Positions 6,056 to 35,651 of a stretch of 64,000 nt of DNA are shown one piece after another. The notes beneath the pieces are model-generated. The model saw only the letters and a program-made list of their open reading frames with translations. It ran no database searches and was not told where the DNA came from. This DNA comes from Podarcis erhardii (Eukaryota): NCBI GenBank assembly GCA_964252035.1, contig CAXUOO010000087.1; one strand, given 5' to 3'. Within the stretch, counting starts at the first letter, position 1. The number at the start of each line of letters is the position of its first letter. The position numbers and the translations under genes were made by a program.

Positions 6056-6447
6056 CTGGATACGCACGTGGATATACTGCTTCGGTTGCGGTCAGCCGGG
6101 TTTTACACAGATCTTTCTCTTTTCTTCAGCCTCGATAATTTGGAATGATAGCTCGCTTAATCCAATACGTTCCCAGAAGGTCGCGAGCGCATGAAAACAT
6201 TCCGACATGAACAAGAAGTCGGTAACTGGGAAAATGAGTGCTGCTTGATGAAGTATCTTCGCTACTTTACGAAAATATTAAAGCTGCGCTTGCTCACAAT
6301 CCAGCGATGGCAGCTATTACGGTGAAAAAGGCTTAGTCAGCCATGCTCCCAAAAGATCTAGGCCGCCAAAATTCAATAAAGAAAATTGTTCCTTGCATCG
6401 AATACAAATTTAGTCTATTCAGTTTTTAAGTGGTGAGTTATACATCA

Positions 6448-10700: not shown

Positions 10701-13700
10701 ATGAGTTCCGTTTCCGCAGTTGTTGTTGAAAGAAGTGGACTTGCTGCTGCTGCTAAAGTTGTCAACAGTGGTCGCCGCAAAAAAGCAGCTGCACAGCCGT
10801 TTCACAAACTCCAGCAGCAGCAGCAGTGGCAGTGGCACCGACTGCAGCGGCAGTTCCAGCGGATTTTTCGAGGCCAACGAACGACTGAGCAGTCTACTCG
10901 AAAATGCGCTGCAGCCTCGCCCCACAGTTGTGTTCTGCAAGTGTTGCAGCAGCGGCACCTGCACACGTCCATGCAGCAGCTGCAGCAAAAGCCAGAGACA
11001 AAGAAAGAGCAACAACAGCAACACCAACAACAACAGCAACAGCCACAACAGCCACAACAGCCACAACAGCATGAGACGGCTCGACTGACTCCACAAAAGG
11101 AGCCGTTGCAGAGAATCGTGGGGCCTCTCCGAAAAAGGAACTTTCTGCAAGACCAGCAACAGCGCCAGACTTGTCAGCAGACGCGCCAGCAGCGAGCAGA
11201 GCACGAAAAGGCAGTTTTTTTTCAGCAGCCACAGCAGCAGAAGCTCCGAAACACGGCAGCAGCAGCGCAGCCAGAGCAGCTGCAAGAAGCGAAGTGCTGG
11301 AGAGACTTCGCGGCTTCCTTCTACGGCTGCCGGCCTTCTTCAGAGGAACTTTCTCGAGCGCTGTGGCCGCTGTGGCTGCGCCTCCAGCAACAGCGGCGGC
11401 ACCCGAACGGCTCGCGCGTTTCATTACTGTCGAAAACCAAAGAAAGCGCAGCAACTGCTTCGAGTGAGTTGTGTTTCCAGCAGCAGCAACAGCGCAGCAG
11501 CGACGACGACTGTCTGCAGCGCACAGCGCGCCGTCTCACTGCGTACGTCTTCACCTGCGCACCAGCGCTGCCAGACGCGGCTGTGTTGCTGGCAGTTTTC
11601 ACTTCTTTGCTTTTGCAGCCTGCTTGCGAGAAAGAAAAAGCGAGCATCAGCTGCGTCCTGCTGCTGCCTCTGCGCGAACTCCTCTTCCGATCTTCCACTG
11701 CGAAACACCAGCACGAGCACCGGCGAACTGGAAAAAGAAACAGCGCTTCGAAGCCAGCCACTCAAGTAGAGAGACGGACTTGCTTGCTGTCTGAAGAAGA
11801 AGCGCTTTCACCCGTCGAGCTGCTGCTGCGGGCCTGCTGCATGCGCAGCCTGCTCCTGCTGCGCATGCAGCAGCTACGAGGAGGCGAGGCCGACGAAGAA
11901 CTACACTCTGACAAAAAACTCGGCGAAACTGCTGCTGCAGTGCTGCTGCTGCTGCAAAGTGTGGGCTCTCTCAAACTGCCAGCTCCGGAACTGTTTCACC
12001 GCGCAGCTGCTCTGCTTGTCTCTTCTCCTCTGCTGCTGCTTCAGCTGCAGCCCCACGCACTGATAAAGCTGCTGCACGTCTACGCCCAGCACGAGCTCCT
12101 TTTGCAGCAGCTGCAGCACAACAACAACAACAACAACTACTGCGACTACTACTACTATTACTGCCGACCACAGTGTAGGGACTCAGCAGCAGCAGGAGCA
12201 GCAGTGCCCACAGCAAATTCCAGTTCATCATCAACAGCAGCAGGAGTAGTGGCAGCAGTGCCCACAGCAAGTTCCAGTTCATCATCAACAGCAGCAGCAG
12301 CAGCAGGAGTAGCAGCAGGAAAAGTAGTGGCAGTGTCTCTGAGTGGGTGTGTTGAGCACTCAGGGCACTTAAAATTTGCACAGTCTGCACAGGCTGCAGA
12401 GGCTGCAGCAGTTGTGAGGGAAACAGCGCCCCAGACTGCAGCGGCTTCAACGCAGCAGCAGACGTCGAAGCCGACAAAAGAGGGAGAAAAAACTCCACGC
12501 ACTGCCTGTCCCAACACTCAGCAAGTGGCAGCAGCTGTGCTAGGCGCCTTGCCCAAAACCACTCGTTTAGAAGGTTCTTTCTCTCTCTCTTCACCCTACG
12601 TATTGCCACTCTTCAGGCGAGTCGCTGTGCGTCTCTGCAGTCTGCAGCGAACCCACGCCCACAAACATCTAGCGCTGCAACAGCTGCGCCTTCAACTGCG
12701 CGCTCTCCAACACCAAATACAGCACCAAATACAGCACCAAATACAGCAACAAATACCGCAGCAGCACCCAATACAGCACCAAATACCGCAGCAGCACCAA
12801 ATACAGCACCAAATACCGCAGCAGCACCAAATACAGCACCAAATACCGCAGCAACACCAAATACTGCACCCAATACAGCAGCAGCACCAAATACAGCAGC
12901 GATTGGTGCAGTGGAAGTGGCCACAAAACCACCACCACCAGCAGCAGCAGGAAGAGTCGTCGCTGCGTTCAGTGGCCCTGCAGTGGGCGCAACAGGTGTT
13001 TTTAGACTTGCCAGCAGTTCGCAAGAAGCAGCGACGACGAAGAAGAGCCCACTCTCTTGAGAAATCGCCCAGTTGGCTAGCGCAGAAAAAGGCTCCTTGT
13101 GTGGATTTGCAGCTGAGTGCGGAGGAGGACCTGCGTGCCGAGCAGTTGCGAGTTTTGCAGCAGCGCGAGAAACAGCTGTGGAGTGCAATCGAGGGTGTGC
13201 AGTTGCAGCAGGAAATGCACTTGAGTGCCGCGCAGATTTCCCGTCTGCTTGCGGCTCTCACGAAACTCGAAATCCTCGACTTTCGAGTGTACAGCCACGT
13301 GGTTTCTTCGTGGATTCCTCACTTGCTGCGTCCACTACTACTGCCACTACTACTACTACGTCGTCAGCCTTTGTCAGTTGCTTCGAAAGAGCAGCTCCCA
13401 CAGCATATTGAACAACGCAGCCAGCCACCACCACCCCCACAGCAGCAGCAGCATCAGAGACAGAAGGAGCAGCAGCATGCAGGGACTACTCTAGAGCGTC
13501 CTGCAGCCCTCCAGAACGCATGCAGTGCAAGGGACTTAGTGGCCCTGTTTGGTGGCTCCGTGCGCATGCTGCGTCTCTGTGATCGCTGGAGGCAAAGCAA
13601 CCAGCAACAGGCAGTCTCCTCTCCAAGCTCTGACTCCGTTGCAGCAGCCGAGGCTCCTACACCTCACCCAGCGAAATCTCCTGCAAATGTGGAGGTTTGT

Positions 13701-15713
13701 GGAGATATGGAAACCAGCTTTCTCGATACGGTTGGCGCCTCGACTTTCGCTGGAAGCTTTGCAGCAGCGCCTGCAACTGAACGAGACACGCGTGGCGTTG
13801 TTATAGCAACTCCCACAGTGAAAATTGCGGAAACAGCTCCACCAGCAGCCGCTTTCGAAAAACTCACATCTGCTACATCAGCAACAACGCAGACAGTTGC
13901 TGCTGCTGCAGAGGGAGGAGCCACAGCGAGAGCTAACGCAAGAAGAGTAGACAATTCCGGGACACTTGTAGGAGTCGATTTTTCTGCAGTGACAACAACA
14001 ACAGCAGGTGGAGTAGTTCACTCAGTTTTTGAAGGCGCCAGTGCCGCCTGTGCTTCGGCCTTTTCTGTGGGAGATGCAGGCTGTTCAACAGCACCAGCAG
14101 AGAAAGCTGAAGTGCGCACAAATACTTGCGCCGGATTTCAGACTGGCTTTGCTGCGCCAGCTCGTTCAGCGCTGGAATCAGCAGAAGCAGCAGCAAACTC
14201 AGCAGAAAACAGTGAGTTGGGAGAGGTGGCGGCTTCGTCTATTGTCGGCACTTTCAGCGACGTCAGTAAACTCCCAGCAGTTGCTCCTGACTCTGCAGCA
14301 AGTTCGACTAGTGACGTCAAAAAATTCTGTGCCAAACGGAAAGCTGAGTCAGCTGCTGTTGGTGCTGCTCCTGTTGCAACAACGCCTACTGGGGGGGGGG
14401 CTGTGGTAGCGGCTGTGGCTTCGGAACCAGCGGAGCAGTTTCTCGTGGAAAACGAAGCTTCTTTTATGACGCTGGCTGTCCGTACACTTCCGCTGCTAGG
14501 GCAGCTGCTGTCTCTGTTGCTCTTGCGCATGGAAAGACTGCATGCAAACAGCGCTGTTTCGTTGCTTCAGAGCGTGACGCAGCTGCTGCTACTGGTGACT
14601 GCTCACCCGCAGCAACAGAAGCTGCTGGAGCTGCTGCTTTGGGAGCACCCTGAACTCGAGCGGACTGAGCAGCTGCAGCCTCAGCAGAAGCAGGACCGAC
14701 TGAGTGGCTTTTTGTGGGGTCTGCATGCACGTCTTTGCAGCTCATTTTTCGACTTCCAGGCCTCACACATAGCCGTCGTTTTGTCTTGTTACGCCTCCTT
14801 TCACAGAGCAGCCAATGCACTATTTCTCAACCACAGACGAAGCAGCCCCCAAAAAGAGGAAGGGCAGCCCCTTCTCCTACAGCGACTGCTGCTGCTGCTT
14901 CCACGCATGCTGCTGCTCCATGCGAATGAGAAGGGCTTGCTGAGCAGACTAGTCAAGTTGCTGCAGCACGAACAGCAGCTTTGGTTTCCTCAACATTTCG
15001 TCAGCGTTTTTAGGGCTCTGACGCTGCTTCAGAACCAGCTGCTTCTTTTCCACACAGTCCAGCCACATAGGCAGTCGCAGCAGCGCGATCCTGGGCAATT
15101 GCAGCGACTTTCTGCAGTGGAAAAAAAGAAAATCGAGCGGCAGCTGCAGGGGCTTCACGTCTCGGCAGTGCCTTGCTGGTTGAAGCAGCAGCAGTTTACG
15201 CAGGGTGGAAGTGGACTTGAAGAAGAAAGCGTGAGAAGAGCTGCTGACGAGCAGCAGAGACACAAGTCTGGACGAAGGAAGGTGGTTGTCGAAAATGCTG
15301 GTGGTGAAGCAGGGTCCCGGAACTTGCAACAGCACTCAGCTTCGTCAGAAACAGCACTTGTTGCTCCTGTCGCTTTTGGAGCCTCTTCTTGCGCTACTAC
15401 GACTGTCTCTACGAGAAAAACTGAGCAACTTCGTTTTCGTGTAGCAGCAGCTGCAGAAGAAGACGAAGAAACTGCACGGAACGCCTGCAAACTTCTCGAC
15501 TCCATCGAACGCGTCCTGCAGGCGAGTTCGGCTCTGCTTCCTCACTCTGTATATACACTCGAAGCTGACTTAGTGTTTCCACTGCTTCTTCTGCTGTTTG
15601 TGTTGCAGTGTGAGACTTCGTTGCTGCGGCACATGCAGTCGCTGAAACGTCTGGCTGCGACTTCACTGTTGGGAAAGATCTACTTCTGGCTACAGTGGAA
15701 ACTAGCCAAGTAG
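10701..15713 (+). CDS. Giant low-complexity protein (1670-aa ORF) with HPR/OPR/RAP-like helical repeats; probable organellar RNA-binding protein
   Basis: Uninterrupted 5-kb ORF starting at ATG, with poly-Q/A/S tracts from CAG repeats. Recurring helical-repeat-like segments: VLLLLQSVGSLKLPAPELFHRAA, LQPHALIKLLHVYAQ, LSAAQISRLLAALTKLEILD, FQASHIAVVLSCYASF, FPQHFVSVFRAL. The family call is motif resemblance by eye. The gene may splice onward past 15.7 kb. Confidence 0.65.
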   Translation: MSSVSAVVVERSGLAAAAKVVNSGRRKKAAAQPFHKLQQQQQWQWHRLQRQFQRIFRGQRTTEQSTRKCAAASPHSCVLQVLQQRHLHTSMQQLQQKPETKKEQQQQHQQQQQQPQQPQQPQQHETARLTPQKEPLQRIVGPLRKRNFLQDQQQRQTCQQTRQQRAEHEKAVFFQQPQQQKLRNTAAAAQPEQLQEAKCWRDFAASFYGCRPSSEELSRALWPLWLRLQQQRRHPNGSRVSLLSKTKESAATASSELCFQQQQQRSSDDDCLQRTARRLTAYVFTCAPALPDAAVLLAVFTSLLLQPACEKEKASISCVLLLPLRELLFRSSTAKHQHEHRRTGKRNSASKPATQVERRTCLLSEEEALSPVELLLRACCMRSLLLLRMQQLRGGEADEELHSDKKLGETAAAVLLLLQSVGSLKLPAPELFHRAAALLVSSPLLLLQLQPHALIKLLHVYAQHELLLQQLQHNNNNNNYCDYYYYYCRPQCRDSAAAGAAVPTANSSSSSTAAGVVAAVPTASSSSSSTAAAAAGVAAGKVVAVSLSGCVEHSGHLKFAQSAQAAEAAAVVRETAPQTAAASTQQQTSKPTKEGEKTPRTACPNTQQVAAAVLGALPKTTRLEGSFSLSSPYVLPLFRRVAVRLCSLQRTHAHKHLALQQLRLQLRALQHQIQHQIQHQIQQQIPQQHPIQHQIPQQHQIQHQIPQQHQIQHQIPQQHQILHPIQQQHQIQQRLVQWKWPQNHHHQQQQEESSLRSVALQWAQQVFLDLPAVRKKQRRRRRAHSLEKSPSWLAQKKAPCVDLQLSAEEDLRAEQLRVLQQREKQLWSAIEGVQLQQEMHLSAAQISRLLAALTKLEILDFRVYSHVVSSWIPHLLRPLLLPLLLLRRQPLSVASKEQLPQHIEQRSQPPPPPQQQQHQRQKEQQHAGTTLERPAALQNACSARDLVALFGGSVRMLRLCDRWRQSNQQQAVSSPSSDSVAAAEAPTPHPAKSPANVEVCGDMETSFLDTVGASTFAGSFAAAPATERDTRGVVIATPTVKIAETAPPAAAFEKLTSATSATTQTVAAAAEGGATARANARRVDNSGTLVGVDFSAVTTTTAGGVVHSVFEGASAACASAFSVGDAGCSTAPAEKAEVRTNTCAGFQTGFAAPARSALESAEAAANSAENSELGEVAASSIVGTFSDVSKLPAVAPDSAASSTSDVKKFCAKRKAESAAVGAAPVATTPTGGGAVVAAVASEPAEQFLVENEASFMTLAVRTLPLLGQLLSLLLLRMERLHANSAVSLLQSVTQLLLLVTAHPQQQKLLELLLWEHPELERTEQLQPQQKQDRLSGFLWGLHARLCSSFFDFQASHIAVVLSCYASFHRAANALFLNHRRSSPQKEEGQPLLLQRLLLLLPRMLLLHANEKGLLSRLVKLLQHEQQLWFPQHFVSVFRALTLLQNQLLLFHTVQPHRQSQQRDPGQLQRLSAVEKKKIERQLQGLHVSAVPCWLKQQQFTQGGSGLEEESVRRAADEQQRHKSGRRKVVVENAGGEAGSRNLQQHSASSETALVAPVAFGASSCATTTVSTRKTEQLRFRVAAAAEEDEETARNACKLLDSIERVLQASSALLPHSVYTLEADLVFPLLLLLFVLQCETSLLRHMQSLKRLAATSLLGKIYFWLQWKLAK
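12710..12900 (+). repeat. Coding tandem repeat (12/27-bp units) encoding (QHQI/PQQHQIQHQI)n
   Basis: Repeated CAAATACAGCAC and CAAATACCGCAGCAGCAC units inside ORF 10701-15713. Confidence 0.9.
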
Positions 15714-19275: not shown

Positions 19276-21729
19276 GTGAGTGCCTCAACGGTGCATGCAA
19301 ATGCTGCGAGTGGTTGGGGTGCATGCAGTTCAGCAGCTGTCTCTGTCGCTGCTGCAGCTCCTCCTTCGCTCTTTGTCTCTTCTTCACCAGTTGATCCACA
19401 GCCCTTTCTGCCTAAACAAACACAAGTCAACAACTTGCTGTTATCGATCCTTCAGCAGCTTCTTCAGTATTTGCCCAAAATGCAGCAAGAACAAATGCGT
19501 CCAAACTCCACTGTTCAAAGCAGTGGCTCTGCAGTCTCCGCTGCTGTGGCTCTCTTCTCCGCAATTTCTTCTGCTGCACTGCATGCAGTCGAAGCAGTGC
19601 ATGCAGCGGAAGGAGCGAAAGGAGCAGGAACAGTGCATGCAGCGGAAGGAGCGAAAGGAGCAGGAACTGTGCATGCAGCGGAAAGAGCGAAAGGAGCAGA
19701 AACTGTGCATGCAGCGGAAGGAGCGAAAGGAGCAGAAACTGTGCATGCAGCGGAAGGAGCAGTTGAGAAAGGGGAAGTGTCGACATTTTGTCAAATTCCA
19801 AAAACACCAAGAGAAAGAAGGACAGAGAAAGGCAATGAAGCGCGACTGGAAAGAGCCACACAGACTCCAGGTTTAGCAGGTATTGAGGCAGCAACAGTTT
19901 CAGTGAACGCTACAGCACCAGCTTCACACTTAACAGCTTCTTCAGCACCAGCAAAATATCGAAAAGCAGCAAATGAAGCAGGACAGTCCACCAATAAAGC
20001 AGCTGCTCTAACAGACGTTTTTCTGACAAGTTCAGCACCGGCAACGAGTCACTCGTGGTTGCAAGAAGTGTCTTCAGCAGATGCAGCGAGGACGGAAAGA
20101 GCAATGACAGCAGTTGCTGCATTGAAAGAAACACTCGTGCATCCACACATGGAAGAGCTGGTTCTTCGACTCGCTGCTTTTTTCCACTCTGAATCTGTTT
20201 CTCTCCGTGTTTTGTCTCGAAAACCAAGTCCTGGTGCGGCTGTGCATGCTCCAGCAACGACAACAGCGACACCCCAAACAATTTGCACGAAAGCTAGCAG
20301 CTGCCACCAAAAAAACGCGGATTTGTCTGATTCTTTTCTTCACAGCAGCTGTAGCCCCAGTGCTGCCTCGCCCTCTCCACCAAAAAAAATGGAGAAAAAA
20401 CGCATCAACAACACTTCGCATGCAAACTCAGCAGCACCACTATTCAGCGGTGCCGCGACAGCGTCAGCTGGAGTGCATGCACCAACAGCAGCAAAAGTTC
20501 CGCTTTTTTTGGTTGACGCTCAAAACTCCCTTGTACACAGCAGCCACCATGTCACCCAGACAGCAGCAGCAGCAGCACCTATAGCAGAAACTGCAGCACC
20601 TACAGCAACAGTTACGGCACTTTCGACAGCTACTGCGTCTAGAACAGATTCGGCACCGACAGGGACCAAAGCTGCAGGAATAGAGGGGGCTGCAGCTCCT
20701 TTCATAGCAACAAGAAATCCAGAAAATAAAGATGCAGAAGCCACAGGTATAAATACGGAAGATGCAGATGCTATTGCTACAGGAGTAGCAGCTTCTCCAG
20801 GGGGAGCTGAGGCCGCGCAGGAGGTCAGTGGCAGCGAAAAGGGAGAAAAAAGAAAGAGTGAAAATGAGAGCCCTTCTTTTTTTGCTAGGCCCAGAAGTTC
20901 GAAGGTGGCTCAGTGGTTTTTCTCAACAGCAACAGCGACTCTGCAACTCAGCCAGTTTTTCGCTGAAAACTGCAGCAATTTGTCTGAGCTGCAAGTGCCA
21001 GAACACCAGCAAAAACGGCCTTTGCAGGAGCACTTCTACAAATTATCTTATAGCAGTAGTAGTAGTGGAGTTTCATTGATAGAGGAGAAGAAGAAGGCAT
21101 TGCAGCCCTATCTTCAGTTGCTGCTTTCTCTACAATGCTTCGCGGACCAGTACTTGAAAGTCCAGTTTAGGAACGAGATTGCTTTGTATGAACTCAGTGG
21201 TGAAACAGAGAAGGGTTTCAAAAGCAAGGACAAGGACATTTCGCAGGTTTGCAGGTGGAGAAATGGAGAAGAGTTGAAGACGTTGTCGAGTAGCACAAAT
21301 TCCGCTTTTTTTAGTGGGAAAAGTCCGTACAGACGCGAATCCGCTGCAGCTCCAATTCCATCAGTAGCAACCAAAAAAGCAGCCGAAGTTTCATCATCAC
21401 TCGAGACAGAAAAAAACGGTGCAAGGACGGCTTCACAAGCAGTAGAAGCAGCTTCATGTTCAGCCAAAGTGGCAGAGGAAACAGCACTGAATATCGGAGC
21501 TCCCACACCTACAAAAACACCGTGTAAGGACGCAGCAGTGTTTCGTGGGGAAGCGGGTGACGATACTTGTTTTGCAGATGTTGAAGTGAAGGAAAATGAA
21601 GTTGAAAAGCAGGCGCGCGCTCTTCAGTTCACAGAAATTAGAAGACGACAGCTGCGTCGACTGCTGCGCATCAGCAGCGCATTGAAACGTATTGAGCAGC
21701 TCTATGTACAAAACAATCTGCTCTTGTAG
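19276..21729 (+). CDS. Large Ala/Ser/Thr-rich coding exon (817-aa ORF), probably the terminal exon of the preceding gene
   Basis: Long open frame (open from 19222, listed start is GTG) with typical coccidian coding composition, an in-frame 12-aa tandem repeat, and helical segments (LLLSILQQLLQYLPKMQQEQM; LRRLLRISSALKRIEQL). Confidence 0.55.
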   Translation: MSASTVHANAASGWGACSSAAVSVAAAAPPSLFVSSSPVDPQPFLPKQTQVNNLLLSILQQLLQYLPKMQQEQMRPNSTVQSSGSAVSAAVALFSAISSAALHAVEAVHAAEGAKGAGTVHAAEGAKGAGTVHAAERAKGAETVHAAEGAKGAETVHAAEGAVEKGEVSTFCQIPKTPRERRTEKGNEARLERATQTPGLAGIEAATVSVNATAPASHLTASSAPAKYRKAANEAGQSTNKAAALTDVFLTSSAPATSHSWLQEVSSADAARTERAMTAVAALKETLVHPHMEELVLRLAAFFHSESVSLRVLSRKPSPGAAVHAPATTTATPQTICTKASSCHQKNADLSDSFLHSSCSPSAASPSPPKKMEKKRINNTSHANSAAPLFSGAATASAGVHAPTAAKVPLFLVDAQNSLVHSSHHVTQTAAAAAPIAETAAPTATVTALSTATASRTDSAPTGTKAAGIEGAAAPFIATRNPENKDAEATGINTEDADAIATGVAASPGGAEAAQEVSGSEKGEKRKSENESPSFFARPRSSKVAQWFFSTATATLQLSQFFAENCSNLSELQVPEHQQKRPLQEHFYKLSYSSSSSGVSLIEEKKKALQPYLQLLLSLQCFADQYLKVQFRNEIALYELSGETEKGFKSKDKDISQVCRWRNGEELKTLSSSTNSAFFSGKSPYRRESAAAPIPSVATKKAAEVSSSLETEKNGARTASQAVEAASCSAKVAEETALNIGAPTPTKTPCKDAAVFRGEAGDDTCFADVEVKENEVEKQARALQFTEIRRRQLRRLLRISSALKRIEQLYVQNNLLL
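19597..19761 (+). repeat. Coding 36-bp tandem repeat, ~4.5 copies, VHAAEGAKGA(G/E)T
   Basis: GTGCATGCAGCGGAA recurs at 19597, 19633, 19669, 19705 and 19741. Confidence 0.95.
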
Positions 21730-24497: not shown

Positions 24498-24534
<37 letters not shown>

Positions 24535-24829: not shown

Positions 24830-27800
24830 TTAGTTCGCATCAACAACAGAAGGAACTGGAGCAGTAGACTGACAGTGGTTGCAAAGCAACAGCAGCAAGT
24901 GCAGCAGTTCCTTCACATTCGTTGTTTCTGCGAAAAACGCAGCGACGCGCATTAGCAGCCACTGAGGCAGTCTAGACCTTTTTTCTCGTGTTTCACCAGT
25001 TAGAGCAGAAGTCCCAGTTTGAGCAACAGAAGCGTTAACGAGAACAGGTGTGACAACAGCGGCACTAGCAGCAGAACTGCAGGAGACTTGAGCAGCAGTA
25101 GCTGCAGCGTGCACAGCGTGCACATTGAAGGCAGCTTGCTTGCAGCGATGATAGTCGTGCTGTCGCTGCTGCAACTCTGAAACCCGAATTTGCAGCTGCT
25201 GCAGTTGTTCAAGTAGCAGACTTGCGTCTTCTACACTGTCAGTCGTCGTACAGCAGGGCACACACCCAGAACACACGAGGTTGACGGACGAACTTCCGTT
25301 TTTTTCTCCAGAAAATTCAGCACTTTGCTGCTGCTGCTTCGTCTGTAGACCTCGTCGCTGCATGCTTGTTCCTCCTCCTCCTCCAGCTTGCGGCTGCAGT
25401 TCTCCACCACCTTGGGTTTTTTGCATCAGTCGCTGCTGTGTAGCAACTCCTCCTTTTTGCTGAATTTTGAGCGGCAACTGCCTCCTCTCTTGCTTCTGCA
25501 CTTGAACGTCGATGACGAGCTGCAGCAGATTTGCATACGAGAAATGGAAAGCAGTCGCAAGCACGCGTGAGTGCTGCTGCGCTATAAGCGGGATACATAG
25601 TCCGTGAAGAAACGCTTGTAGAGGCGGGAGGCCGAACGAGCCCAACACATTCTTTACTTTCTCCGAGAATCGACGAAGCTGCCCCAAAGCAGCAGGAGTC
25701 AGCTGCAGCTGCTTATGCTGCTGCTGCTTGTTCCCCTGTCTTGTGTCATGAAAAGATGGCACCAACAGCAGCTGCTGCTTCTTCTTCTCCAGTTGCTCCG
25801 TTGACGGTCGTCGACGTTGTTTTTTTTTCTTTTGAAAGAGCAACTTGAGCTGCTGAGGCTCTTCCGCTGCTGGTGCATGCACGGAGGAGCAAAGTGGCAG
25901 TGAGTCGCTCGTAGCTGTCTTCGAAGTTGCTGGGTTGCTGAGTGCGCCTCTTCGCTGTCCTTCACACTCAGAGGAGACTTTCATCTGCAGTCTGCAGCTG
26001 TTCTTGTTAAACTCGTTCGAAGCACTGAATCGAGTGCAGCTGCTTTCACAGCTGCTGTCGCTGGATTCTGGGGGTGGTTGGGGACTGCAGCAGCAGTTGA
26101 TACTTTTTCTGCTGTGGTGTTGTGTTTGAGCGGCACTTCTTCTTTCTGTCTTGCCCTTGATTTTCTGCTGTTCGCAACAAGTTCCACTGTTTCTGTCTAG
26201 TGGGCTGTTACTGCTAGTGGTGGTGCAAGTGGGCTCGTCCTCAGTGCCCCCAAAAAAAGCAGCAGCAGTAGTAGTAGTAGCAGTAGTAGTAGTAGTACGA
26301 GCAACAACAACAGCAGCAGCTGCAGGTGTGTGGTTTTGCTGCAGTTTTTCTTCCAACTGCTGCTGCTGCGTCCCCAAACGAACACAACACGGCTCTTGCT
26401 CTTGCTTTTGCTGATGATGATGAAGAGGATGATGCAGAGACGGCTTTGAACTGGCTGATTTCTGTTTCTCAAACTTGGACTTGTGCGTAGAAAGCGGGAG
26501 TGCTGCTGACTGTGGCGACTGCAAAAGAAAAGCAAGCAAGTCAGCCGGCGAGCGCCACAGTGCGTTTGCATGCAGTTGCTGAAGGAGTCTGCGAGAAGGC
26601 AGAGGTTTCAAGTTGAAGCCCAGCAGCATGCGTTCAGCAGCAGCAGCAGCTTGTCCGAAAAGGTTTCAAGTTGAAGCCCAGCAGCATGCGTTCAGCAGCA
26701 GCAGCAGCTTGTCCGAAACAGTCCTCTTCCTCGCAGACACTGCAGACGCATAGGGGAAACCGCGCAAGTGGCAGTCGACGCTGACGAAAAAACTGCTGCA
26801 CCTGCTTTTTCTTGACTGTTGTTGTCGTAATGGTGGTGCTGACTGTAAATCTCACTGCCTCGGTTCCTCACACTCCTCGATTTGCATGCAGCAGCCCCGC
26901 CCTTTCCCCCTACTCCTCCTCCTGCTACTGCGACTGCTACTAGAGGCCCTCCGCAAGAGGGACAAGTTTGGGGCGAAAACGAAGGCAGCGCCTTCAAAGT
27001 CTGCACAGGCTCTGTGCGTGGAGAAATTGCCTGCTCTTTCCTCTCCCTCAACCACACCAAGGGCCTGCTGAAATGCTGCTGCTGCTGCGTTTTCTGCTGC
27101 TGCTGCGTTTTCTGCTGCTGCTGCGTTTTCTGCTTGATGCCGAGAACGGCGGGAACCACTCCGCCGACGAGGTGTACGTACACCTGGTCTCCGGGCTGAA
27201 GCAGGCGCAGGGCCTCGGCTTGTCCGCAGCTGACACTGCGTGCATGCAGAGGGCCCAGCCGGACTGGTTTGAGAGTCGCGACTTTGCGCAGTCTGCCGCT
27301 CAAGCTGACAGCGTAGTCTACTGCTTGCACTTCAGCGCATGCAACTGGCTGCGGAAACTTGAAGGCCACTGCCCAGTGAGGCGAGCGACGCGAACTCAGC
27401 AGCAGCTGCTGCTGCTCTAGAGCTGCTGCTTTGAAGACTACGCCGTCGAGAGGAGTGTCTTCTACTGAAGGCCCCAACAACAGTGGAGCGAAGAGAGAGT
27501 CTGCAGCTGCAGCTTCGCTCGAAGAGCTGCTGAGGCGAGGGCGACTGTGGCTGTCTTTGACTTTCGACGCTGTCTCCCTGCTGCTCTGGTTTCTGCTGTC
27601 TGCGTCGCTTCTGCCCGACGAGGAAAAACCCGGAAAAAACACAGAAAGTGGGCTTTTTTCCCTGCTTTTCGACTCCACTCGCTCCTCTCTCTGACTGCTC
27701 CGCGTGCTGTCCTCTACCTGCGGATCTACACGAAATCGCTGCTGCTGTTGCTGTTCAAACTGCTGTTCAAACTGCTGTTCAAACTGCGGTTCAAACTGCG

Positions 27801-30800
27801 GTTCAAACTGGAGCTGGAAGCCGGGGTTCAGAAACTCCTGCTGAGAAGAGGACTGCGGCTGCTCCAGAGACTGTCCACTTTGCTGCTTTTTCTCGGTGAA
27901 AGTCCGCAGTTGCTCCGCCTGTTGCGGAAGAAAACGCATGCAGTCGTGGACAGTGAGTGGCTCTTCTTTTTTCTCGGGAAACTGCATCTGTCCCTGCTGC
28001 TGCTTCAGAAAACTGGCCAGTCTCCGCTGCTGCTGCTGCTGGTTTCGGGCGAAAAAGCAGGCAAATGTCTGACAGTCTTGGAGAGTGTGGCACAACTGAG
28101 CGTGGAAAAACAAAGGCGTCAAAAAGCCTGCTTCTTGCAGCAGCAGCAATAGTTGTCTTTGTGAGGCAACTGGCACTTCCAAAGCCAGTTGGTTTCCACA
28201 CCTCTTTTCTTCCGCTTTCTTCGGCTTCTCCAACTCCTCCACTTCTTCACCTCGCTGTGATGGTGCAACTAGTCGTGGCTGATGTGGCTCTTTCTTTTTT
28301 TCTTGTAGCAGTTTTAGCTGCTGTGAGTGTAGCTGAGGTGGTGGCTCTGAGTGTGGTGGCTGCAGCGCTCGTTGTGAGGACTGTGAATGGACTCTTTCGT
28401 TGAGGACCCTTTTTGTCGCTTTTCGCTGCTTTGGAGACTCTGAAAATGCATGCGCTGCTTCTGCATCCGAAGCAGGAGCAGCAGCAACGGCAGCGGAATT
28501 CTCTGCAGTTGCGCCTGTTGTGGGTTTCGTTGAGACTGCATGCAAAGAAGCCTTTCCAGCAGCAGCAACAGCACAAGAGTCAGCACACAAAGCAGACTCA
28601 GAAAAGGGCACTGTTACACAAGAAGCCGAAGAGAAGTCGAAGGGCGGTGTGGTTGCCCAACTGCTTTGCGGAAAAAACGCAGCAGCAGATTGCTGGGAAA
28701 CCAGTGCAGTCTCAGTCGCTTTAGCTGATAGTAGAGCTTGAGCAGGCGTCGGAGCTTTAGCAGCAGCACCATTTGAAGAAGAGGGACCAACAACAGAGGA
28801 AAAACGAGGAGAAAGAACCCCGCTGAGACAAAGAGCTGCTTCAGTAGTAGGAGTCGTTGTTGCAGAAGAGGAAGAAGAAGAAAAAGCAGTACTACAAGCC
28901 GAAAAAACCCCATTCTTCATTTGGTCCTCACTGCTATTCAAGACAGACTTTGCTTCTGTGGAGAGTGTGGAGTCAACTTCTCTTCTTCGCTCCTTTTGCT
29001 TCTGCTCGGCTGTCCCTGCTACTACTCCTTCTTCTGCAGTCGACTCGAGGTGTATGTACACTTCGTTTCCGAATTTCGAGGAGCCGGTCGTTCGCGATTT
29101 CGGCGGGAGAAAAGAAGAAAAAGCTGCATGCGTCGGTTCCGCGAGGAAAGTGTCAGCATTTTTGAAAGACTTCTGCATTTTCGGTTGTTCTTGCTGTTGG
29201 AGCGGCTCTTCTACTAGCCCAAAAGCTACAAAATGCAGCAAGTCGCAGTGTTCAGCCGTACGAAGGAGGGCACTTGCTGCATGCCTTGCAAACACAAGAC
29301 GGTGAAAATCTGTCTTTTTTTGAGTGGAAGAAATTACGAAAACTGAGAGGTCTGGTGAGTTCTACATGCACTTGCGAGATTCTACATATGCATTGCACGT
29401 AAAAGAGGGACCCGAGATCGAAACAGAGAGTAGAATAGGGGATTTTGTTGTTTGAAAGGTAGTCAACACATGTATATATGTCTGTAGATATACGATACTT
29501 TACTTTTGTAGATATATATAGTGGTATGATATAAGCCTCTCTATCCACAATCTGCAGAAACACACACTGGAAAGGGGACAAATTCACACAGGAGAGACAC
29601 GTAGATGGGGTTGTCGCTCCTGATTGCTTCTTCTCTTCCTTAGTCAGCCACACATACACAGAAATTCATCCATAATATATACGTACAGGTGCCTACTTTT
29701 ATTCTCTTTCAGGTATATACAGTAGAGGCACTCACAAATATATACTGCTGCTAGCCTTTCACGCCGCTGCCACCACTGCTCTATACGCTGCTACGGTAGT
29801 TGCTCTTGTTGGTGCAGCGATTTCTGTTCAAACTCACTTTTATCGCAAAAAGCCCAATCAGCTGCTGCCATTACTGCTGTACTGTGTCAAACCACGGCTA
29901 CTATGACAGATTTATACATATATATATATATATATATATATTGTATTTTATGTATTGTTGGGAAACTGGATATATTCGAGCTAGGAGACGACACCGAGAC
30001 CCATTTTTCTCTCTTCTTGTTCTGTTTTATGTGCTGCTGTCTACTACTGGGTGTTACTATTCTTACTAGAACTGTAAAAGCAACTATCATTTCTCCTGCC
30101 ACAGTACCGAACCGACTAGTGTAACTCTTCTTAATGCTATGACTACTGGCTCCACTAGTCGTACGGGTCTCTATGCCAGCTGAGGCTCGTCTTAGCACTA
30201 CATATGGTGCTACAAACTAATATAAAGCTGCTGCTATTGTTGCAAGTATATAGAATATACTTGCATTGATCCTGCTGTTCTTGCAGTTGCTGCAGTAGCC
30301 TCAGCGCTGTTAGAAATATTCATGTGGCTGCTGCTGGACTTGCTGGTACTCGAATGAAGAAGTTGTTGCCACTAATTCACTTCTGTTATCAAACTAGCTG
30401 CTACTGCTGTCGCTGATTCACTCTTGGTGCAGCTCATATAAGTATATATAAGTTTTAGTTAGTACACCAGTTGTGTACACAGGGATTCTCTACATGAATA
30501 TATATATATATATATCCGTATAAATCTGATACAACTCTTCCTGTGTTTGTTTCTTCTATTGCTGTGACTACTACGAGCCCTTTACTATCTCCGTCAATTC
30601 TGTTGTAGTTCATACGACTATTACGACAACAACACCTACTATCAATATTACAACTACTGCAACTACTACTACTAATACTGCTACTTCTGCTACTACTGCT
30701 GCTTATTACAATTATTGCTAGGAATCTCACCTAACTACTACGACGATGCAGATTGTGAGAAGGAAAGTACACAAGTAAGGACATACATACTTGTACATCG

Positions 30801-33213
30801 ATAAATATATATATATATATATATGTATATACGTATGTTTATGTATATTAAAGGTGGAAAATTTCTTGCTGACAGTGAAGTTTTCACTGCTTACCGTGGA
30901 TGTAATATAGGGCGTTTTCCAGAAGCAGCCCTTCGCTCATTTAATATTTGCAAACTCGATAGTGTAATGAAAACCTCCCCTCTCACCTGGAAAACAGGAC
31001 GAGAAAACAAGTCAGCACGAGAAAGCATGCACGAAATTTTTTTAAGAAAAAAATATATATCTGTAGTATTTTTTCCGCATGTCTTCTTTCTTTACATTTC
31101 AGTGCGCAGTAGTTTTTATATACACGAGAAGAAGAATCTGCACCGTTTTAGACATGTAGTTGAGCGAACACAGCTGCTTGTGCCGCAGCAGCAGCAGCAG
31201 ATTTTCTAGGCAGCGGAAAATGTAAACAGACAAAGAGAGAGAAGACGCTAAATTGGACTACTTTTCCGCTCACCACGAGGTTGCAGCTGCTGCAATAGCT
31301 TGAGAGCTTCTCCTCATATATATATATATATACATGTGGTTGAGTAGCCAGCAAAGCCGGAAACGCGATAGTCCAACGCATGTGCAGGTTCAACATATAA
31401 AATCCCAATACCAATATATATATACATATATATATATATGTTATGGATATAGATTGTGAGAGAGAAAATGCGGGAGAAAAGAAAGAGAAGACTGACTGCA
31501 TTGTCCGCTCGCGTAAGTAGCACCATCATCGACAACTGCTGACTTCGCTATCCGCACAAGTAAGAGATTCCAAGCTTGTACAAACACCTAAAATTAGAAA
31601 TTTCTATATTTGAGTAGATAATACAAGTATGCGCGCAACAATGAGATATCTCTTTTTGCTTTACATGTGTGTGGTTATACTCGTATTGGAGAACTTCTTT
31701 TTCAGCATAGATGCATGCACATGCAGGCTCATCCTCCAGTCCCAATGATGCAGAGCCAAACATATGCAGATTTGGAGAGAAGCACGTCCACCTAGAAGTT
31801 GGACTGGTTTTTTAGATAAATTCAAGGTGGGGCAGAGCCTGATTATTACCTCCAAAGTAGTAATAACGCAGCCAGCAGAAAAGAAGCCTTCAACTGGAAC
31901 ACGTTTAGTAGCTTTAGCTGTGGGTGCCTTTGTTGTGCCTGTTTCAGCAAGTTTGAAAGACGTAGCACGAAAACTGAGAGGCAATTGGCCCGTTTGTGCA
32001 AGGCACTGAACAGCAGCAGTAACATCATCTCCTTGGAGCCCGTTGCCCCTCAATGCTGCATGCACTAAATTCCATTCAACAAAAGCTGCAGCAGCAAGTC
32101 CACCACCAGTCGCTGTTTTTGAGGCAGCAGCATCAACCACTCTACTAAAAGAGCTAGAAATCGAAGAAGGAAATGCAGCAAAAGGAAGAGGTGAGGACTT
32201 CACAGCAGCAACATTCAAAGGAACTTGAAGAGGAGGAGTAGTCTGGGAAGAAGGCGAAAGAGAGGCTGCTCGAACAGGTATGTAGCGAAGAGCGCATGCA
32301 ACGCCATCGAATTTGGGTTCTGCAAACAGAGGAAGTGGCAGCAAAAACGTCTCGTTTTCTGCTGCTGTGGTTCTTGAATCTGGTTTAGGGGTTAGTTTCT
32401 GCACTGTTGCAGTCCAGGCGGCTTCTGATGAATGTGCTGATGCGGCGATTTTTTTACTCCCGTTTTTAGCATCCGTAGATTTGCCCCCTCTTGCTTTCGC
32501 CAACCTGTCACAACAAATCTCAGAAACACTCACAGAACAAAGTAGAAAATGCGTAGACGCAGTCGCTTCTCTATCAAGTCAACTAAAGATACATAGAAAA
32601 GTCGACAGCTGATTTCTGCACGTTGGAGACCAGCTGAGACTGTCGTGTATGTACAGTGACACAGAGATCAGCGAAGAAGACTATGTGCATTATTCGATAT
32701 TGATTTCTACAAAAGATATACAAAAACGTTCTCTAGCACATTTTAAGCAGCTTTCTATCGTTCACAACTTCATCTTTTTTCGACAAACAACCGCACAAGT
32801 AGAAGTTGATTTCTGACACCAGATTATGCATGTATATATAAGGGTGCGCGAAACACCAAATAGTACACGTATGCATCCTTTGTCACTTGCATACGCGAGA
32901 ATCTCATACGCATTGGAAAAAGCGTATCATCAGTTTGGAAGAAAAAAGCACCTTGTTTCTTTTTTGCCTTCCCTGAACTCTTATGCTATCTCTCTGACTT
33001 TTAGAATCCTATGCAGGAATCATCAGAAACACTCAGATAAACTCTACAGGGGTACATAGACATATACAGATATATCCGAAATGTGTCTTTGGGTATGTAT
33101 ATGTGTTGGAGTAACGCAGAGTAGAAAGACGATTATGCCGACACAACTAGTTGACCATCAACATCTGATGCTATAAGCTCTACTCTGACTGAAATTTCAC
33201 CTACACTAGAAGT

Positions 33214-33261
<48 letters not shown>

Positions 33262-33376
33262 AAATATATAAAAGTAGGTGATTGAAATTTACGTATATAT
33301 GTATAATATATTTATATTATATATATATGTTTAAAGAATCAAAAACTTGTAGAAGCGCGTGCTGAACATTCGCACA

Positions 33377-33416
<40 letters not shown>

Positions 33417-34573
33417 GAACATGAAATATGCAGAAATGGGTGTTTGAGGTTGACAGATACTTACATATATGTGGAGTGCAGAAAAAGATGTAGAAGTTGG
33501 TGTATTAGACTTCCATATACATATGGGGTGTGGCGACTCTGCAATAACATATCTATGTTGCTCTAGAGTCGTGTATACTTTCATGTGTGTGTTAAATTGT
33601 ACACATGTACATCTCCTCTTTTTCCACAAATATACATAATAGCTGTATTACTTCTCAGTCATGCGCAGAATAAACTGGCAGAGACTTTGAAAGTCCCGAA
33701 CTGCGTCCAATGAGAGCATTGGCTCAATGTGCGTGTGCCGCACTTGTCTTCCAATGTTTGAAAGTTGCCGCTTCTCTGTCTCCAATAGCAGAAGAGAGGC
33801 CATGGTCTGCTTCGGTTGATTCAGAAGCTGAGCAGAACAATCTTGGCTTTCTTTCAGTGCTGCATTTGCTCTCACGCATGCTTTTTCCTCTGACTCAGCA
33901 GTGGCTTTTCTCTGAAAATTGCTGCTGCTGTTATGAAGGGGTGGTGGGCCAATATATTGAGAAGGACTGTGCTCATCTCGTAGAGCAGGAAAGCGCTGCA
34001 GCAGCACTCGCGACAATCAAACAGAAGCGCCACACTTTCTATGGAACCATCTGAAGTTTCTTTTCCTTCCACACATACACATGCGTTGCCTATAGATTGC
34101 GAATATGTGTTGTGTATGTACGTCTCGGAATCTGCGGTTTACGCAAAGCACATGTATTTATATCAAAAAAGCGAAGAACACACGCAACATCTTCTCACCG
34201 CTGTTCAGGTCTATGTGATGATATGGAAGACACATGACGATTCTCTCATATCAGCAGATCATCATTTTCACATAATCTCGATTCGTCGTGTACAGCTGTT
34301 GCTCTTCGCTCTCTACCCTCGAATTCCATAATCGTGCCTCATTCTCTAAGTCTTCGTATAGACATTTTTACATAGGAAGAGGTCGATTCAAATTACTTTG
34401 CTCAAGACTGGAACTACGAAAAATACAAAAGGCCAGCCACACTTCTTCTGCACATTTCACCCAGGTTCCTTCGTGTTAAATCCGGAAACAATCAAATATA
34501 TACACAATTAGTATTATGTAAGTTCCTTTAGCCTCGACCGCACCCTGAAATCACAAAATATACATATATATAA

Positions 34574-34604
<31 letters not shown>

Positions 34605-35651
34605 ATTTGTGAGCTTCGAACGTACTGTAGAAAGTAGATGTATATATTTGCAATCATATATGTTTTTATGTACTCTGAACTTTCACCAGCTGCGATTGAG
34701 ATGCATATGTAAGTAAGTATAACATATATACACCCGTGGATCGGCGAAGATAATTTTCTGTCTGCAATCATTCCAGGTTGAGTTGCTTCTGAGCCCTCGG
34801 AGTGTGGACATGCATAAAAATAATCAGCAAGGAGCATCCATACAGACACACACACATATATATTTGTCTAGGTATGTGAATCCTTTTCAGGCTCTTGATG
34901 AAATATTTTTCAGTGCTATATTATACAAGTGCACTAAGTACTGCTTTTTCAAGTTTCAAATTACACATGTGAAAAGTGAAAAAGATGTATACGTACTCGA
35001 CTTTATATGTGAGAGTTACATGTGAGTATGTATATCGTATATAGACGTGTGTCCTATAAATGTATTTACTTTTTCAATTTGCAAAAGTTTCTCCTTTAAG
35101 ACGTCATATACAGTGTCTGGCATGAGAGAGAGATCCCTTGAAAAATAAGCTTCGTCGCACATGTGCAACTGCTTGCGTAGATGCGCCCAGTCTCGCAGCT
35201 CTTCAGCCGTTGGATTTTCTCGTTCTGCTTCAGCTTTTCCTTCTTCTGTGAAAGGAAGTCCTGTTTCTTCTGCGGATGATACTGTATCTGGTTTCGTTGC
35301 CGTTTTTCGTATCGCTACCTTCACTGCTGCTGGTATTGCTGCAGCTGTTGTTGCTGATGAGGCTTCAAGTGGTGCACGTACTGCAAGTGTTCTGAATCGA
35401 AGCATCTGCAGCTGCCTGGCTGCTGTACCCGTTGCAGTTGATGCTGCTTCTGCTGTATTTGGTGCCAGAACTCCTCTGTTTGCTGCTGTACGGAAGGCCC
35501 TGCATCTACGCCATTCGCAGGAGTGAATATGTCGGTGCTGTTTCGATGGACAGAAAAAACTCAATTTTCTTACGTTGTATGCCGCTAGTTCTGCTGCATA
35601 ACATAATGGCTGCAGCTGCTTCATCTGCTGCAGCACGAACAACTGCCGCAT
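24830..35651 (-). CDS. ligA: NAD+-dependent DNA ligase (bacterial LigA family), ~1990 aa, six exons: 35651-35070, 33995-33652, 32504-31850, 30986-30895, 29284-26872, 26780-24830 (the last contains a 58-bp duplication that breaks the frame as assembled)
   Basis: All LigA modules appear in order after splicing. Domain Ia: LRKQL..CDEAYF..D...PDTVYD and SPSQYIG. Then HIEPMLSLD; motif I EPKFDG (32303-32314); LRGNGLQGDDVT; motif III LE|VRGEV; HPR|HAASALLR; IIIa LHFVAFG; SQRQLL.LL.EAGF; motif IV PLDGVVFK; motif V PHWAVAFKFP; OB-fold (KVATLKPVRLG, PGDQVYV..VGGVVP); Zn finger CPSC...CEEEDC; HhH blocks SPADLL, LQAFLHGLCIPLI, VAAFFA. Phases match at all introns, and the summed CDS without the duplication is 5979 nt, a multiple of 3. 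The exon-3 acceptor and the 91-nt intron 5 are the least certain boundaries. Confidence 0.92.
26603..26718. repeat. Perfect 58-bp tandem duplication inside the ligase last exon
   Basis: AGGTTTCAAGTTGAAGCCCAGCAGCATGCGTTCAGCAGCAGCAGCAGCTTGTCCGAAA occurs at 26603-26660 and 26661-26718. Confidence 0.95.

What the first reader, a model, noticed from the sequence alone, without database searches (positions are those of the whole stretch)
24830..35651. Intron-containing bacterial-type NAD+-dependent DNA ligase in a coccidian nuclear genome
Seen: domain Ia (DEAYF..D...PD.VYD, the NAD+-specificity module), KxDG, motifs III/IIIa/IV/V, OB-fold, C4 Zn finger and HhH blocks are colinear across six exons. 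Spliceosomal introns split core motifs (LE|VRGEV, HPR|HAA). Established: NAD+-dependent ligases are typical of bacteria and a few viruses/haloarchaea, whereas vertebrate nuclear and mitochondrial ligases are ATP-dependent. Inference: this is an old endosymbiotic or horizontal acquisition that may be the organellar (mitochondrial or apicoplast) ligase, and a possible host-absent drug target. I cannot tell from the sequence whether orthologues are already annotated in coccidian databases.
Basis: partly seen in the sequence, partly recalled or inferred. Interest (0 to 1): 0.9.

Follow-up and report, generated by a model that had tools for sequence, protein, structure and literature searches.

The report
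Coccidian nuclear bacterial-type NAD+ DNA ligase

Summary
On the minus strand, 35651-24830, five GT-AG exons encode a LigA-type protein: domain Ia, KxDG, motifs III/IIIa/IV/V, OB fold and the first half of the Zn finger. The spliced model scores 187 bits against a profile of 88 bacterial LigAs; the best of 200 shuffles scores 3.6. Only NAD+-ligase Pfam families match.

The frame breaks at a 1-nt slip (~26721) and an exact 58-nt tandem duplication (26603-26718). The tail ORF keeps only remnants of the HhH domain, and there is no BRCT domain.

Orthologues are already annotated in Neospora, Hammondia, Eimeria maxima, E. magna and Cyclospora. A 2025 paper notes the Toxoplasma annotation and its absence from Plasmodium.

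All four intron positions and phases match Neospora, and three match Cyclospora. The gene is therefore old and truly nuclear, not contamination. Coccidian LigAs form one clade (100/97), but their bacterial source is unresolved.

The nucleotidyl-transfer and NMN-binding residues are kept. Several DNA-contact residues (R277, R333, R379) are lost in all coccidia.

A basic, acid-poor N-terminal extension suggests organelle targeting, which is untested. Novelty is modest: a new member of a known, uncharacterised kind.

The parts
35070..35651 (-). Exon 1: start ATG at 35651, a ~150-aa basic N-terminal extension, then domain Ia (core at 35097-35156: Y..D..YD). Ends IEK|GTAAAT, phase 0.
   Evidence: Pfam Nlig-Ia is weak on this piece alone. 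Local HMM domain 1 scores 44 bits.
33996..35069 (-). Intron 1 (1074 nt, GTAAAT...CAG, GC 0.37). Same position and phase as in Neospora and Cyclospora.
33652..33995 (-). Exon 2: RFPAL..HSPSQYIG, a ~62-aa insert, then EPMLSLD. Ends in a split Lys codon (AA|GTAATA, phase 2).
32505..33651 (-). Intron 2 (1147 nt, GTAATA...ACAG, GC 0.34, (TA)n microsatellites). Phase 2 in a Lys codon, as in Neospora.
31850..32504 (-). Exon 3: motif I EPKFDG (32297-32320, adenylylated Lys), an insert, ALRGNGLQGDDVT (32018-32059). Ends TLE|GTAATA, phase 0.
30987..31849 (-). Intron 3 (863 nt), splitting motif III as LE|VRGEV. Shared with Neospora, absent from Cyclospora.
30895..30986 (-). Exon 4 (92 nt): VRGEVF...ILHPR. 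Ends CG|GTAAGC, phase 2.
29285..30894 (-). Intron 4 (1610 nt), splitting motif IIIa as HPR|HAAS. Shared with Neospora (HER|HAAR) and Cyclospora (SPR|HAVV).
26695..29284 (-). Exon 5 as assembled (863 codons; stop at 26692-26694): rest of motif IIIa, two low-complexity inserts of about 330 and 180 aa, motif IV LDGVVFK (27430-27450), motif V HWAVAFKFP (27352-27378), OB fold (27136-27345), Zn finger Cys1-2 CPSC (26947-26964) and Cys3 in RLQCLRGRG (26722-26748).
26603..26721 (-). Frame break: one extra base at ~26721 separates GRG (exon-5 frame) from CFGQ (Cys4, next frame). An exact 58-nt x2 tandem duplication (26603-26718) then shifts the frame again.
   Evidence: Compared with Hammondia/Neospora RLRCARGRGCPAQ....
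24833..26665 (-). Tail ORF (611 codons, third frame; stop at 24830-24832): degenerate HhH domain. Remnants lie at 26540-26600 (LPSRRLLQQLHANALWRSPADLL), 25541-25687 (LQAFLHGLCIPLIAQQHSRVLA) and 24851-24976 (FFAETTNVKELL, the last helix). No BRCT.

Best explanation
This is the window species' orthologue of the coccidian 'DNA ligase (NAD+), putative'. It is a nuclear gene of bacterial LigA ancestry, interrupted by spliceosomal introns, and was already in the common ancestor of Sarcocystidae and Eimeriidae. The protein is about 2000 aa, and roughly 70% of it is lineage-specific low-complexity insertion. It keeps domain Ia, the nucleotidyltransferase domain, the OB fold and a Zn finger. It has a worn HhH domain and no BRCT. 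Inferred mechanism: domain Ia binds the NMN half of NAD+; the Lys of EPKFDG is adenylylated; AMP is passed to the 5'-phosphate of a nick; the nick is then sealed. The basic, acid-poor N-terminal extension, present in every orthologue, makes an organelle the most likely workplace (mitochondrion or apicoplast). There it would seal nicks in organellar DNA replication and repair alongside or instead of ATP-dependent LIG1. Shown here: homology, gene structure, conserved introns, conserved catalytic residues. Inferred: activity, NAD+ use, location. The 1-nt slip and 58-nt duplication are most simply an assembly or sequencing error, or a very recent lesion.
For: Homology: 187 bits against the bacterial LigA HMM versus 3.6 for shuffles; 2OWO at E 1e-11; Pfam PF01653, PF03120 and PF22745 only. 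Catalytic set kept (E. coli numbering): Y22, D32, Y35, D36, E113, K115, D117, G118, R136, E173, R200, D285, K290, K314. In all, 46 of 62 alignable positions that are >=93% conserved in bacteria are kept, the same fraction as in Neospora (43/58) and E. maxima (50/66). Orthology: WIN+Neospora 100/99 and coccidia 100/97; annotated orthologues. Introns: 4/4 positions and phases shared with Neospora, 3/4 with Cyclospora. N-terminal extension: the first 100 aa hold 15 K+R against 4 D+E. Neospora and E. maxima have no acidic residue in their first 100 aa. The E. magna model starts with a poly-Leu signal-like stretch. The tail ORF of 611 stop-free codons still matches the orthologues' C-terminal helix.
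Against: There is no transcript, proteomic or biochemical evidence. The T. gondii protein was not found in the stored (truncated) hyperLOPIT tables. As assembled, the ORF stops at 26692-26694, before Cys4 and the HhH domain. Residues known to me as DNA-contact residues in E. coli LigA (Shuman laboratory mutational work, recalled and not read here) are replaced: R277->P, R333->L, T334->S, R379->L. The HhH glycines are also lost, so nick sealing may be weak or altered. Plasmodium maintains both organelle genomes without LigA (PMC12838351), and red algae and plants use LIG1 in organelles, so an organellar LigA is not a necessity. The window protein has no signal-peptide-like stretch, so its N-terminus fits a mitochondrial presequence better than an apicoplast leader. 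No targeting predictor could be run.
Confidence: 0.6

Rival explanations
1. The protein is an active NAD+ ligase that works in the nucleus as an extra DNA-repair ligase rather than in an organelle. In this reading the N-terminal extension is just another low-complexity region.
For: The window's N-terminus lacks a signal peptide. Coccidia have broader repair pathways than Plasmodium, the link suggested in PMC12838351. Bdelloid rotifers show that a horizontally acquired ligase can serve nuclear repair (PMC10665377, title and abstract).
Against: All orthologues carry 100-280 aa, acid-poor, Arg/Ser-rich leaders upstream of domain Ia, and one has a signal-like start. The possibly related BRCT-less proteins P0239 and P0240 start with Arg-rich presequence-like stretches.
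Confidence: 0.2
2. In this species the gene is decaying or has lost ligase function. It would be a truncated protein (Ia-NTase-OB, no HhH) or a pseudogene kept open by chance in CAG-rich sequence.
For: There are two frame-breaking lesions within 120 nt. The HhH hairpin glycines and R277/R333/R379 are lost. The terminal branch is long, at 1.6 changes per column. Tail homology is weak.
Against: The catalytic and NMN-binding residues are fully kept, and conservation equals that of the orthologues. Exon 5 has 863 stop-free codons and the tail 611; by chance this is about e^-42 and e^-29 for random sequence, less extreme in biased sequence. R277, R333 and R379 are lost in all coccidia, not just here. 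An exact 58-nt duplication is a typical assembly or very recent event.
Confidence: 0.13
3. The frame break is bridged by splicing. A 131-nt intron, GT at 26719-26718 to AG at 26590-26589, removes both copies of the duplication and restores the frame, giving ...CLRGRG-L-LLQQLHANALW...
For: GT...AG with a pyrimidine-rich acceptor (CCTCTGCCTTCTCGCAG) and matching phases, worked out from the sequence.
Against: The donor (GTTTCG) is weak. The intron would delete about 25 codons that align with conserved Toxoplasmatinae residues, including Cys4. Neospora has no intron there.
Confidence: 0.05
4. The region is bacterial contamination of the assembly, or a recent transfer. NCBI labels the Hammondia orthologue UNVERIFIED_CONTAM.
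For: The Hammondia record carries that label, and the best non-coccidian matches are bacterial.
Against: There are four spliceosomal introns at positions shared by three genera, coccidian-style low-complexity inserts, and only about 30-35% identity to any bacterial LigA.
Confidence: 0.01

Closest known systems
Annotated coccidian 'DNA ligase (NAD+), putative' / 'NAD-dependent DNA ligase OB-fold domain-containing protein' (N. caninum XP_003885386.1, H. hammondi XP_008883447.1, E. maxima XP_013337883.1, E. magna KAL8441447.1, C. cayetanensis XP_026191713.1; T. gondii annotation cited in PMC12838351)
   Same: Same domain order and same four intron positions as Neospora. It shares the 'H-x-R-H' form of motif IIIa, the loss of R333/R379 and BRCT, the giant inserts and the basic N-terminal leader. 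It falls in one clade with them, 100/97.
   Different: Identity is only 44% to Neospora and about 30-35% to Eimeriidae in conserved columns. Its HhH glycines are more eroded than in Eimeriidae or Neospora. The frame is broken at the Zn finger in this assembly. This species' protein was not in the searched libraries at >50% identity.
Bacterial LigA (E. coli LigA, PDB 2OWO/4GLX)
   Same: Ia-NTase-OB-Zn-HhH order. All nucleotidyl-transfer and NMN-binding residues are kept.
   Different: No BRCT; R277, R333, T334 and R379 replaced; about 1400 aa of insertions; spliceosomal introns; N-terminal leader.
BRCT-less LigA-like proteins of other eukaryotes (EukProt g1353.t1 = P0104, g2451.t1 = P0238; Logan P0239 on a contig beside a LYR-motif gene; ENA P0240)
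   Same: They lack BRCT, have His in place of Asn198, and P0239/P0240 have presequence-like starts. Sister to coccidia in the quick tree (SH-aLRT 84). One clade is not rejected (AU p 0.51).
   Different: They are compact (540-680 aa) and P0239 is intronless. They keep R277, R333 and R379. Their pairwise identity to coccidia is no higher than that of bacteria. The careful tree leaves the link unresolved. Their species are unknown to me.
ATP-dependent LIG1 used in organelles (Plasmodium LIG1, PMC12838351; Arabidopsis and Cyanidioschyzon LIG1, PMC4166229)
   Same: The job proposed here: sealing nicks in organellar DNA.
   Different: An unrelated cofactor module (ATP, no domain Ia). No match to these families in the window gene.
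Viral and phage NAD+ ligases (phage LigA; entomopoxvirus and mimivirus enzymes, from my own knowledge)
   Same: Short architectures without BRCT. The language-model neighbours of P0104 are such families.
   Different: Phage and viral LigAs are at most 35% identical to P0104, no closer than alphaproteobacterial ones at 36-40%. Nothing here points to a viral source.

Membership tests
NAD+-dependent DNA ligase (LigA) | Domain Ia with NMN-binding residues (E. coli Y22, D32, Y35, D36) | tested here: met
   Y169, D179, Y182 and D183 of the model align to them; H23 is Phe. The Pfam Nlig-Ia hit is weak on the exon piece.
NAD+-dependent DNA ligase (LigA) | Nucleotidyltransferase motifs I (KxDG), III, IIIa, IV, V with catalytic Lys | tested here: met
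   E113, K115, D117, G118, R136, E173, R200, D285, K290 and K314 are all kept. PF01653 hits on three exon pieces are colinear.
NAD+-dependent DNA ligase (LigA) | LigA-type OB-fold domain | tested here: met
   PF03120 at E 1.3e-6 (28.7 bits; below Pfam's 32.9 cut-off on the piece). 95 bits in the local HMM. 2OWO residues 283-392 aligned at E 1e-11. DNA-contact residues R333, T334 and R379 are replaced.
NAD+-dependent DNA ligase (LigA) | Cys4 zinc finger | tested here: inconclusive
   Cys1-3 are in frame. Cys4 is reached only across a 1-nt slip at ~26721.
NAD+-dependent DNA ligase (LigA) | Four helix-hairpin-helix motifs | tested here: inconclusive
   Colinear remnants only (4.5 bits; last helix at E 2e-4). 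Hairpin glycines replaced. The domain lies beyond the frame break.
NAD+-dependent DNA ligase (LigA) | C-terminal BRCT domain | tested here: not met
   No residue aligns to profile positions 590-667 in the window or in any coccidian orthologue. BRCT is dispensable for ligation in bacterial enzymes (PMC5052709), so this does not bar membership.
NAD+-dependent DNA ligase (LigA) | Adenylylation by NAD+ (not ATP) and nick sealing | not testable with these tools
   Needs recombinant protein.
Coccidian LigA orthologue group | Monophyly with annotated coccidian proteins | tested here: met
   Ultrafast bootstrap/SH-aLRT of 100/97 for coccidia and 100/99 with Neospora. The tool warns that these two long branches meet.
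Coccidian LigA orthologue group | Shared intron positions and phases | tested here: met
   4 of 4 shared with Neospora (L044) and 3 of 4 with Cyclospora (L045).
Nuclear-encoded organelle-targeted protein | N-terminal targeting leader (signal plus transit peptide for the apicoplast, or an amphipathic presequence for the mitochondrion) | tested here: inconclusive
   Composition only: 15 K+R against 4 D+E in the first 100 aa and no hydrophobic signal stretch. The E. magna model has one. No predictor was available.

The most novel reading that the evidence does not exclude
Coccidian LigA and the BRCT-less, presequence-bearing LigA-like proteins of other protists (P0104, P0238, P0239, P0240) are one old eukaryotic lineage of organellar NAD+ ligases. 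That would be a surviving piece of bacterial-type replication machinery, lost in Plasmodium, plants and animals. It would overturn the textbook line that cellular eukaryotes lack NAD+ ligases, and it would give coccidia a host-absent, druggable organellar enzyme.
Probability: 0.15. Interest if true: 0.7.

Novelty: new member of a known kind. Interest (0 to 1): 0.4.

Why it matters
NAD+-dependent ligases are absent from vertebrate hosts and have known inhibitor classes. A functional, essential LigA in coccidia (Toxoplasma, Eimeria, Cyclospora, Sarcocystis-like parasites) would therefore be a selective drug target. The conserved introns shown here also settle that these genes are true nuclear genes, not contamination as one public record is labelled. 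However, the gene family is already annotated in public coccidian genomes. What is missing is experiment (location, activity, essentiality), not discovery.

Tried and rejected
- ATP-dependent ligase: no such Pfam family matched any exon piece at E<=0.1.
- A separate exon 5 between 30894 and 29285: rejected. HPR joins directly to HAAS at 29284.
- Global hmmalign of the 2000-aa model failed because of the giant inserts. It was replaced by local domain mapping.
- An intron between the Zn-finger halves: none fits. Frame 0 carries RLQCLRGRG, matching Hammondia RLRCARGRG, so the break is a frameshift plus a duplication.
- A 58-nt mini-intron: the repeat unit holds no GT.
- Alphaproteobacterial (mitochondrial) origin: the best hits of Cyclospora LigA and of P0104 are alphaproteobacterial (Holosporales; Rhodospirillales at 36-40%). 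The trees do not place coccidia with them.
- Gemmatimonadota/Acidobacteriota affinity: these were retrieved only because they share the search peptides, and they are not close in the tree.
- Phage or viral origin: at most 35% identity.
- Support values of 98 that I first read off re-rooted trees were label-shift artefacts. The true value for coccidia + P0104 is 84, or unresolved.
- T. gondii localisation in the hyperLOPIT supplements: not found, and the files are truncated.
- Andalucia mitochondria use an ATP ligase.
- Neighbouring large ORFs gave no Pfam domain and no clue to the species.
- The first attempt at search for related loci, with a gappy alignment, failed.
- Papers on E. coli LigA mutagenesis (PMC2719376, PMC2516987) are not held. 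The essential-residue list therefore rests on my memory plus the conservation counted.
Full report
**Observation**

The region 24830-35651 holds a minus-strand gene. Six-frame ORF pieces give colinear hits to the NAD+-ligase Pfam families only: Nlig-Ia, DNA_ligase_aden (three pieces) and DNA_ligase_OB. A local HMM of bacterial LigAs places them in order: profile 7-51, 49-100, 109-155, 144-202 and 284-400. E. coli LigA (PDB 2OWO/4GLX, residues 283-392) aligns to the motif IV/V-OB piece at E about 1e-11.

**Gene model**

Reading the minus strand gives five exons: 35651-35070, 33995-33652, 32504-31850, 30986-30895 and 29284-26695.

- The introns are 1074, 1147, 863 and 1610 nt long.
- They begin GTAAAT, GTAATA, GTAATA and GTAAGC, and all end in AG.
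- Their GC is 0.34-0.40 against 0.44-0.54 in the exons, and each frame of each intron holds 4-45 stops.
- There is no separate exon between 30894 and 29285.
- The spliced 1421-aa product scores 187 bits (E 3e-59) against the HMM of 88 bacterial LigAs. The best of 200 shuffles scores 3.6 bits.

**The "sixth exon"**

Exon 5 runs into a stop at 26692-26694. Upstream of it, the exon-5 frame reads RLQCLRGRG, which matches Hammondia RLRCARGRGCPAQ. The fourth cysteine and the following residues (CFGQAAAAAERMLLGFNLKP) lie one frame over, behind one extra base at about 26721.

An exact 58-nt tandem duplication (26603-26718; TRF 2.0 copies, 100%) then shifts the frame again, into the 611-codon tail ORF 26665-24833. 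The repeat unit holds no GT.

The only GT-AG pair that restores the frame is 26719...26589 (131 nt). It would delete about 25 conserved codons. In Neospora the whole stretch, from HAAR to the stop, is one exon. I therefore read the break as an assembly error or a very recent lesion, not an intron. This needs reads or cDNA to settle.

The tail keeps only remnants of the HhH domain:
- HMM 4.5 bits for profile positions 478-530.
- The last helix, FFAETTNVKELL, resembles E. coli FFAEESNRNVISELL and matches Neospora at E 2e-4 and 0.002 by hhalign.
- There is no BRCT domain.

**Residues**

Of 74 positions that are at least 93% conserved in the 88 bacterial LigAs, 62 can be aligned in the window protein and 46 are identical. 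That is the same fraction as in Neospora (43/58) and E. maxima (50/66).

Kept (E. coli numbering): Y22, D32, Y35 and D36 (NMN binding); E113, K115, D117, G118, R136, E173, R200, D285, K290 and K314.

Replaced: R277 to P, R333 to L, T334 to S, R379 to L, N198 and N201 to H, and the HhH glycines. The changes at R277, R333 and R379 are shared by all coccidian orthologues. The roles assigned to these residues come from my memory of the Shuman laboratory's mutational studies, because the papers were not held.

Roughly 70% of the ~2000-aa protein is low-complexity insertion. This includes about 330 and 180 aa inside the NTase domain, in frame and stop-free.

**Already known?**

Yes. An exhaustive HMMER search put coccidian proteins at the top. 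Their records read:
- "DNA ligase (NAD+), putative" in Hammondia hammondi; one copy is labelled UNVERIFIED_CONTAM.
- [quoted passage not shown] in Neospora caninum (1981 aa).
- The same name in Eimeria maxima.
- A hypothetical protein in E. magna.
- LOC34619791 in Cyclospora, which UniRef names DNA ligase (NAD(+)).
- E. stiedai also has one.

A 2025 paper calls the T. gondii annotation "an intriguing exception" not seen in Plasmodium (PMC12838351). I found no functional study. No protein more than 50% identical to the window's was in the library, so this species' copy is not represented there.

**Age and authenticity**

I mapped the annotated Neospora and Cyclospora proteins back onto their loci (L044, L045).

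- All four window introns coincide in position and phase with Neospora: LLHLEE|VHP phase 0; a split Lys codon phase 2; FLE|IRGE phase 0; HER|HAAR phase 2.
- Three coincide with Cyclospora: VLEK|KHP, a phase-2 split codon after FDRLD, and SPR|HAVV.

The intron-bearing gene therefore predates the split of Sarcocystidae and Eimeriidae and is not contamination.

**Origin**

In a careful tree (86 rows, 394 columns, LG+C20), coccidia are one clade (100/97). The window groups with Neospora (100/99; the tool warns of two long branches). Eimeriidae are the sister group (100/97). The window species thus sits on the Sarcocystidae side; the species itself was not identified.

The clade's position among bacteria is an unsupported polytomy. 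It is not with the sampled alphaproteobacteria, where the brown-alga Cladosiphon protein sits in the larger quick tree (99). It is not with Melainabacteria, nor with the Gemmatimonadota/Acidobacteriota that the peptide-pattern search retrieved.

A group of BRCT-less LigA-like proteins came out as sister in the quick tree (SH-aLRT 84). It comprises two EukProt entries and two metagenome or SRA contigs. One of these contigs lies beside a LYR-motif gene, and two of the proteins have Arg-rich presequence-like starts. A single clade with coccidia is not rejected (AU p 0.51; constrained tree 0.2 lnL better). But pairwise identities show no special closeness. Values of 98 that I first read from re-rooted trees were label artefacts. 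Phage and viral LigAs are no closer.

Endosymbiotic versus horizontal origin stays open. True cyanobacteria and Rickettsiales could not be sampled.

**Function**

The intact adenylylation and NMN-binding residues argue for an NAD+-using enzyme. The eroded OB and HhH contacts and the missing BRCT argue that DNA binding differs from bacterial LigA.

Every orthologue has a 100-280-aa leader upstream of domain Ia that is rich in Arg, Ser and Ala and nearly free of acidic residues:
- Window: 15 K+R against 4 D+E in the first 100 aa.
- Neospora and E. maxima: no D or E in the first 100 aa.
- E. magna: the model begins with a poly-Leu signal-like stretch.
- The window, E. maxima and Cyclospora leaders look more like mitochondrial presequences.

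Plasmodium does without LigA, and plants and red algae use LIG1 in organelles. An organellar role is therefore plausible, not required. The stored hyperLOPIT tables did not list the protein.

**Verdict**

This is a real gene, correctly spotted, and it is old and nuclear. The family is already annotated in coccidia but uncharacterised. New here are:
- the conserved intron positions;
- the clade-wide loss of BRCT and of R277, R333 and R379;
- a possible link to other BRCT-less eukaryotic LigAs;
- the frame break in this assembly.

Interest is moderate.

Noticed in passing
window 26603-26718: An exact 58-nt x2 tandem duplication lies inside coding sequence, next to a 1-nt frame slip at ~26721. 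It is probably an assembly artefact or a very recent event.
   Followed up: partly
window 27076-27134 and 27749-27810: In-frame coding microrepeats in exon 5: an 18-nt unit x3.3 (KTQQQQ repeats between the OB fold and the Zn finger) and a 12-nt unit x5.2 (FEPQ/FEQQ repeats).
   Followed up: no
window 33213-33328, 33376-33413, 34558-34602, 29913-29941, 24500-24528: (TA)n microsatellites in the introns and the 3' flank of the ligase gene. In translation they read as YIYIYI runs.
   Followed up: no
window 10701-15713 (+), 19276-21729 (+), 4547-6067 (-): Large ORFs of 1670, 817 and 506 codons in GC-richer DNA with no Pfam domain. They are probably exons of neighbouring low-complexity coccidian genes.
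   Followed up: partly
window 59213-59384: A run of 172 N (assembly gap or mask). Left alone.
   Followed up: no
public record KEP65901.1 (P0030, Hammondia hammondi): NCBI labels one copy of the Hammondia orthologue UNVERIFIED_CONTAM. The introns shared by the window, Neospora and Cyclospora argue that the coccidian gene family is authentic. The Hammondia locus itself was not examined.
   Followed up: partly
P0184 (Cladosiphon okamuranus, 1304 aa), P0216 (Monoraphidium minutum, 993 aa), L035:572-2587: Other eukaryotic protein sets also hold LigA homologues. The brown-alga one sits among alphaproteobacteria in the larger quick tree. The green-alga one sits elsewhere, and neither is with coccidia. 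An intronless BRCT-less LigA with an Arg-rich start lies beside a LYR-motif gene on Logan contig ERR12177238_2815521.
   Followed up: partly
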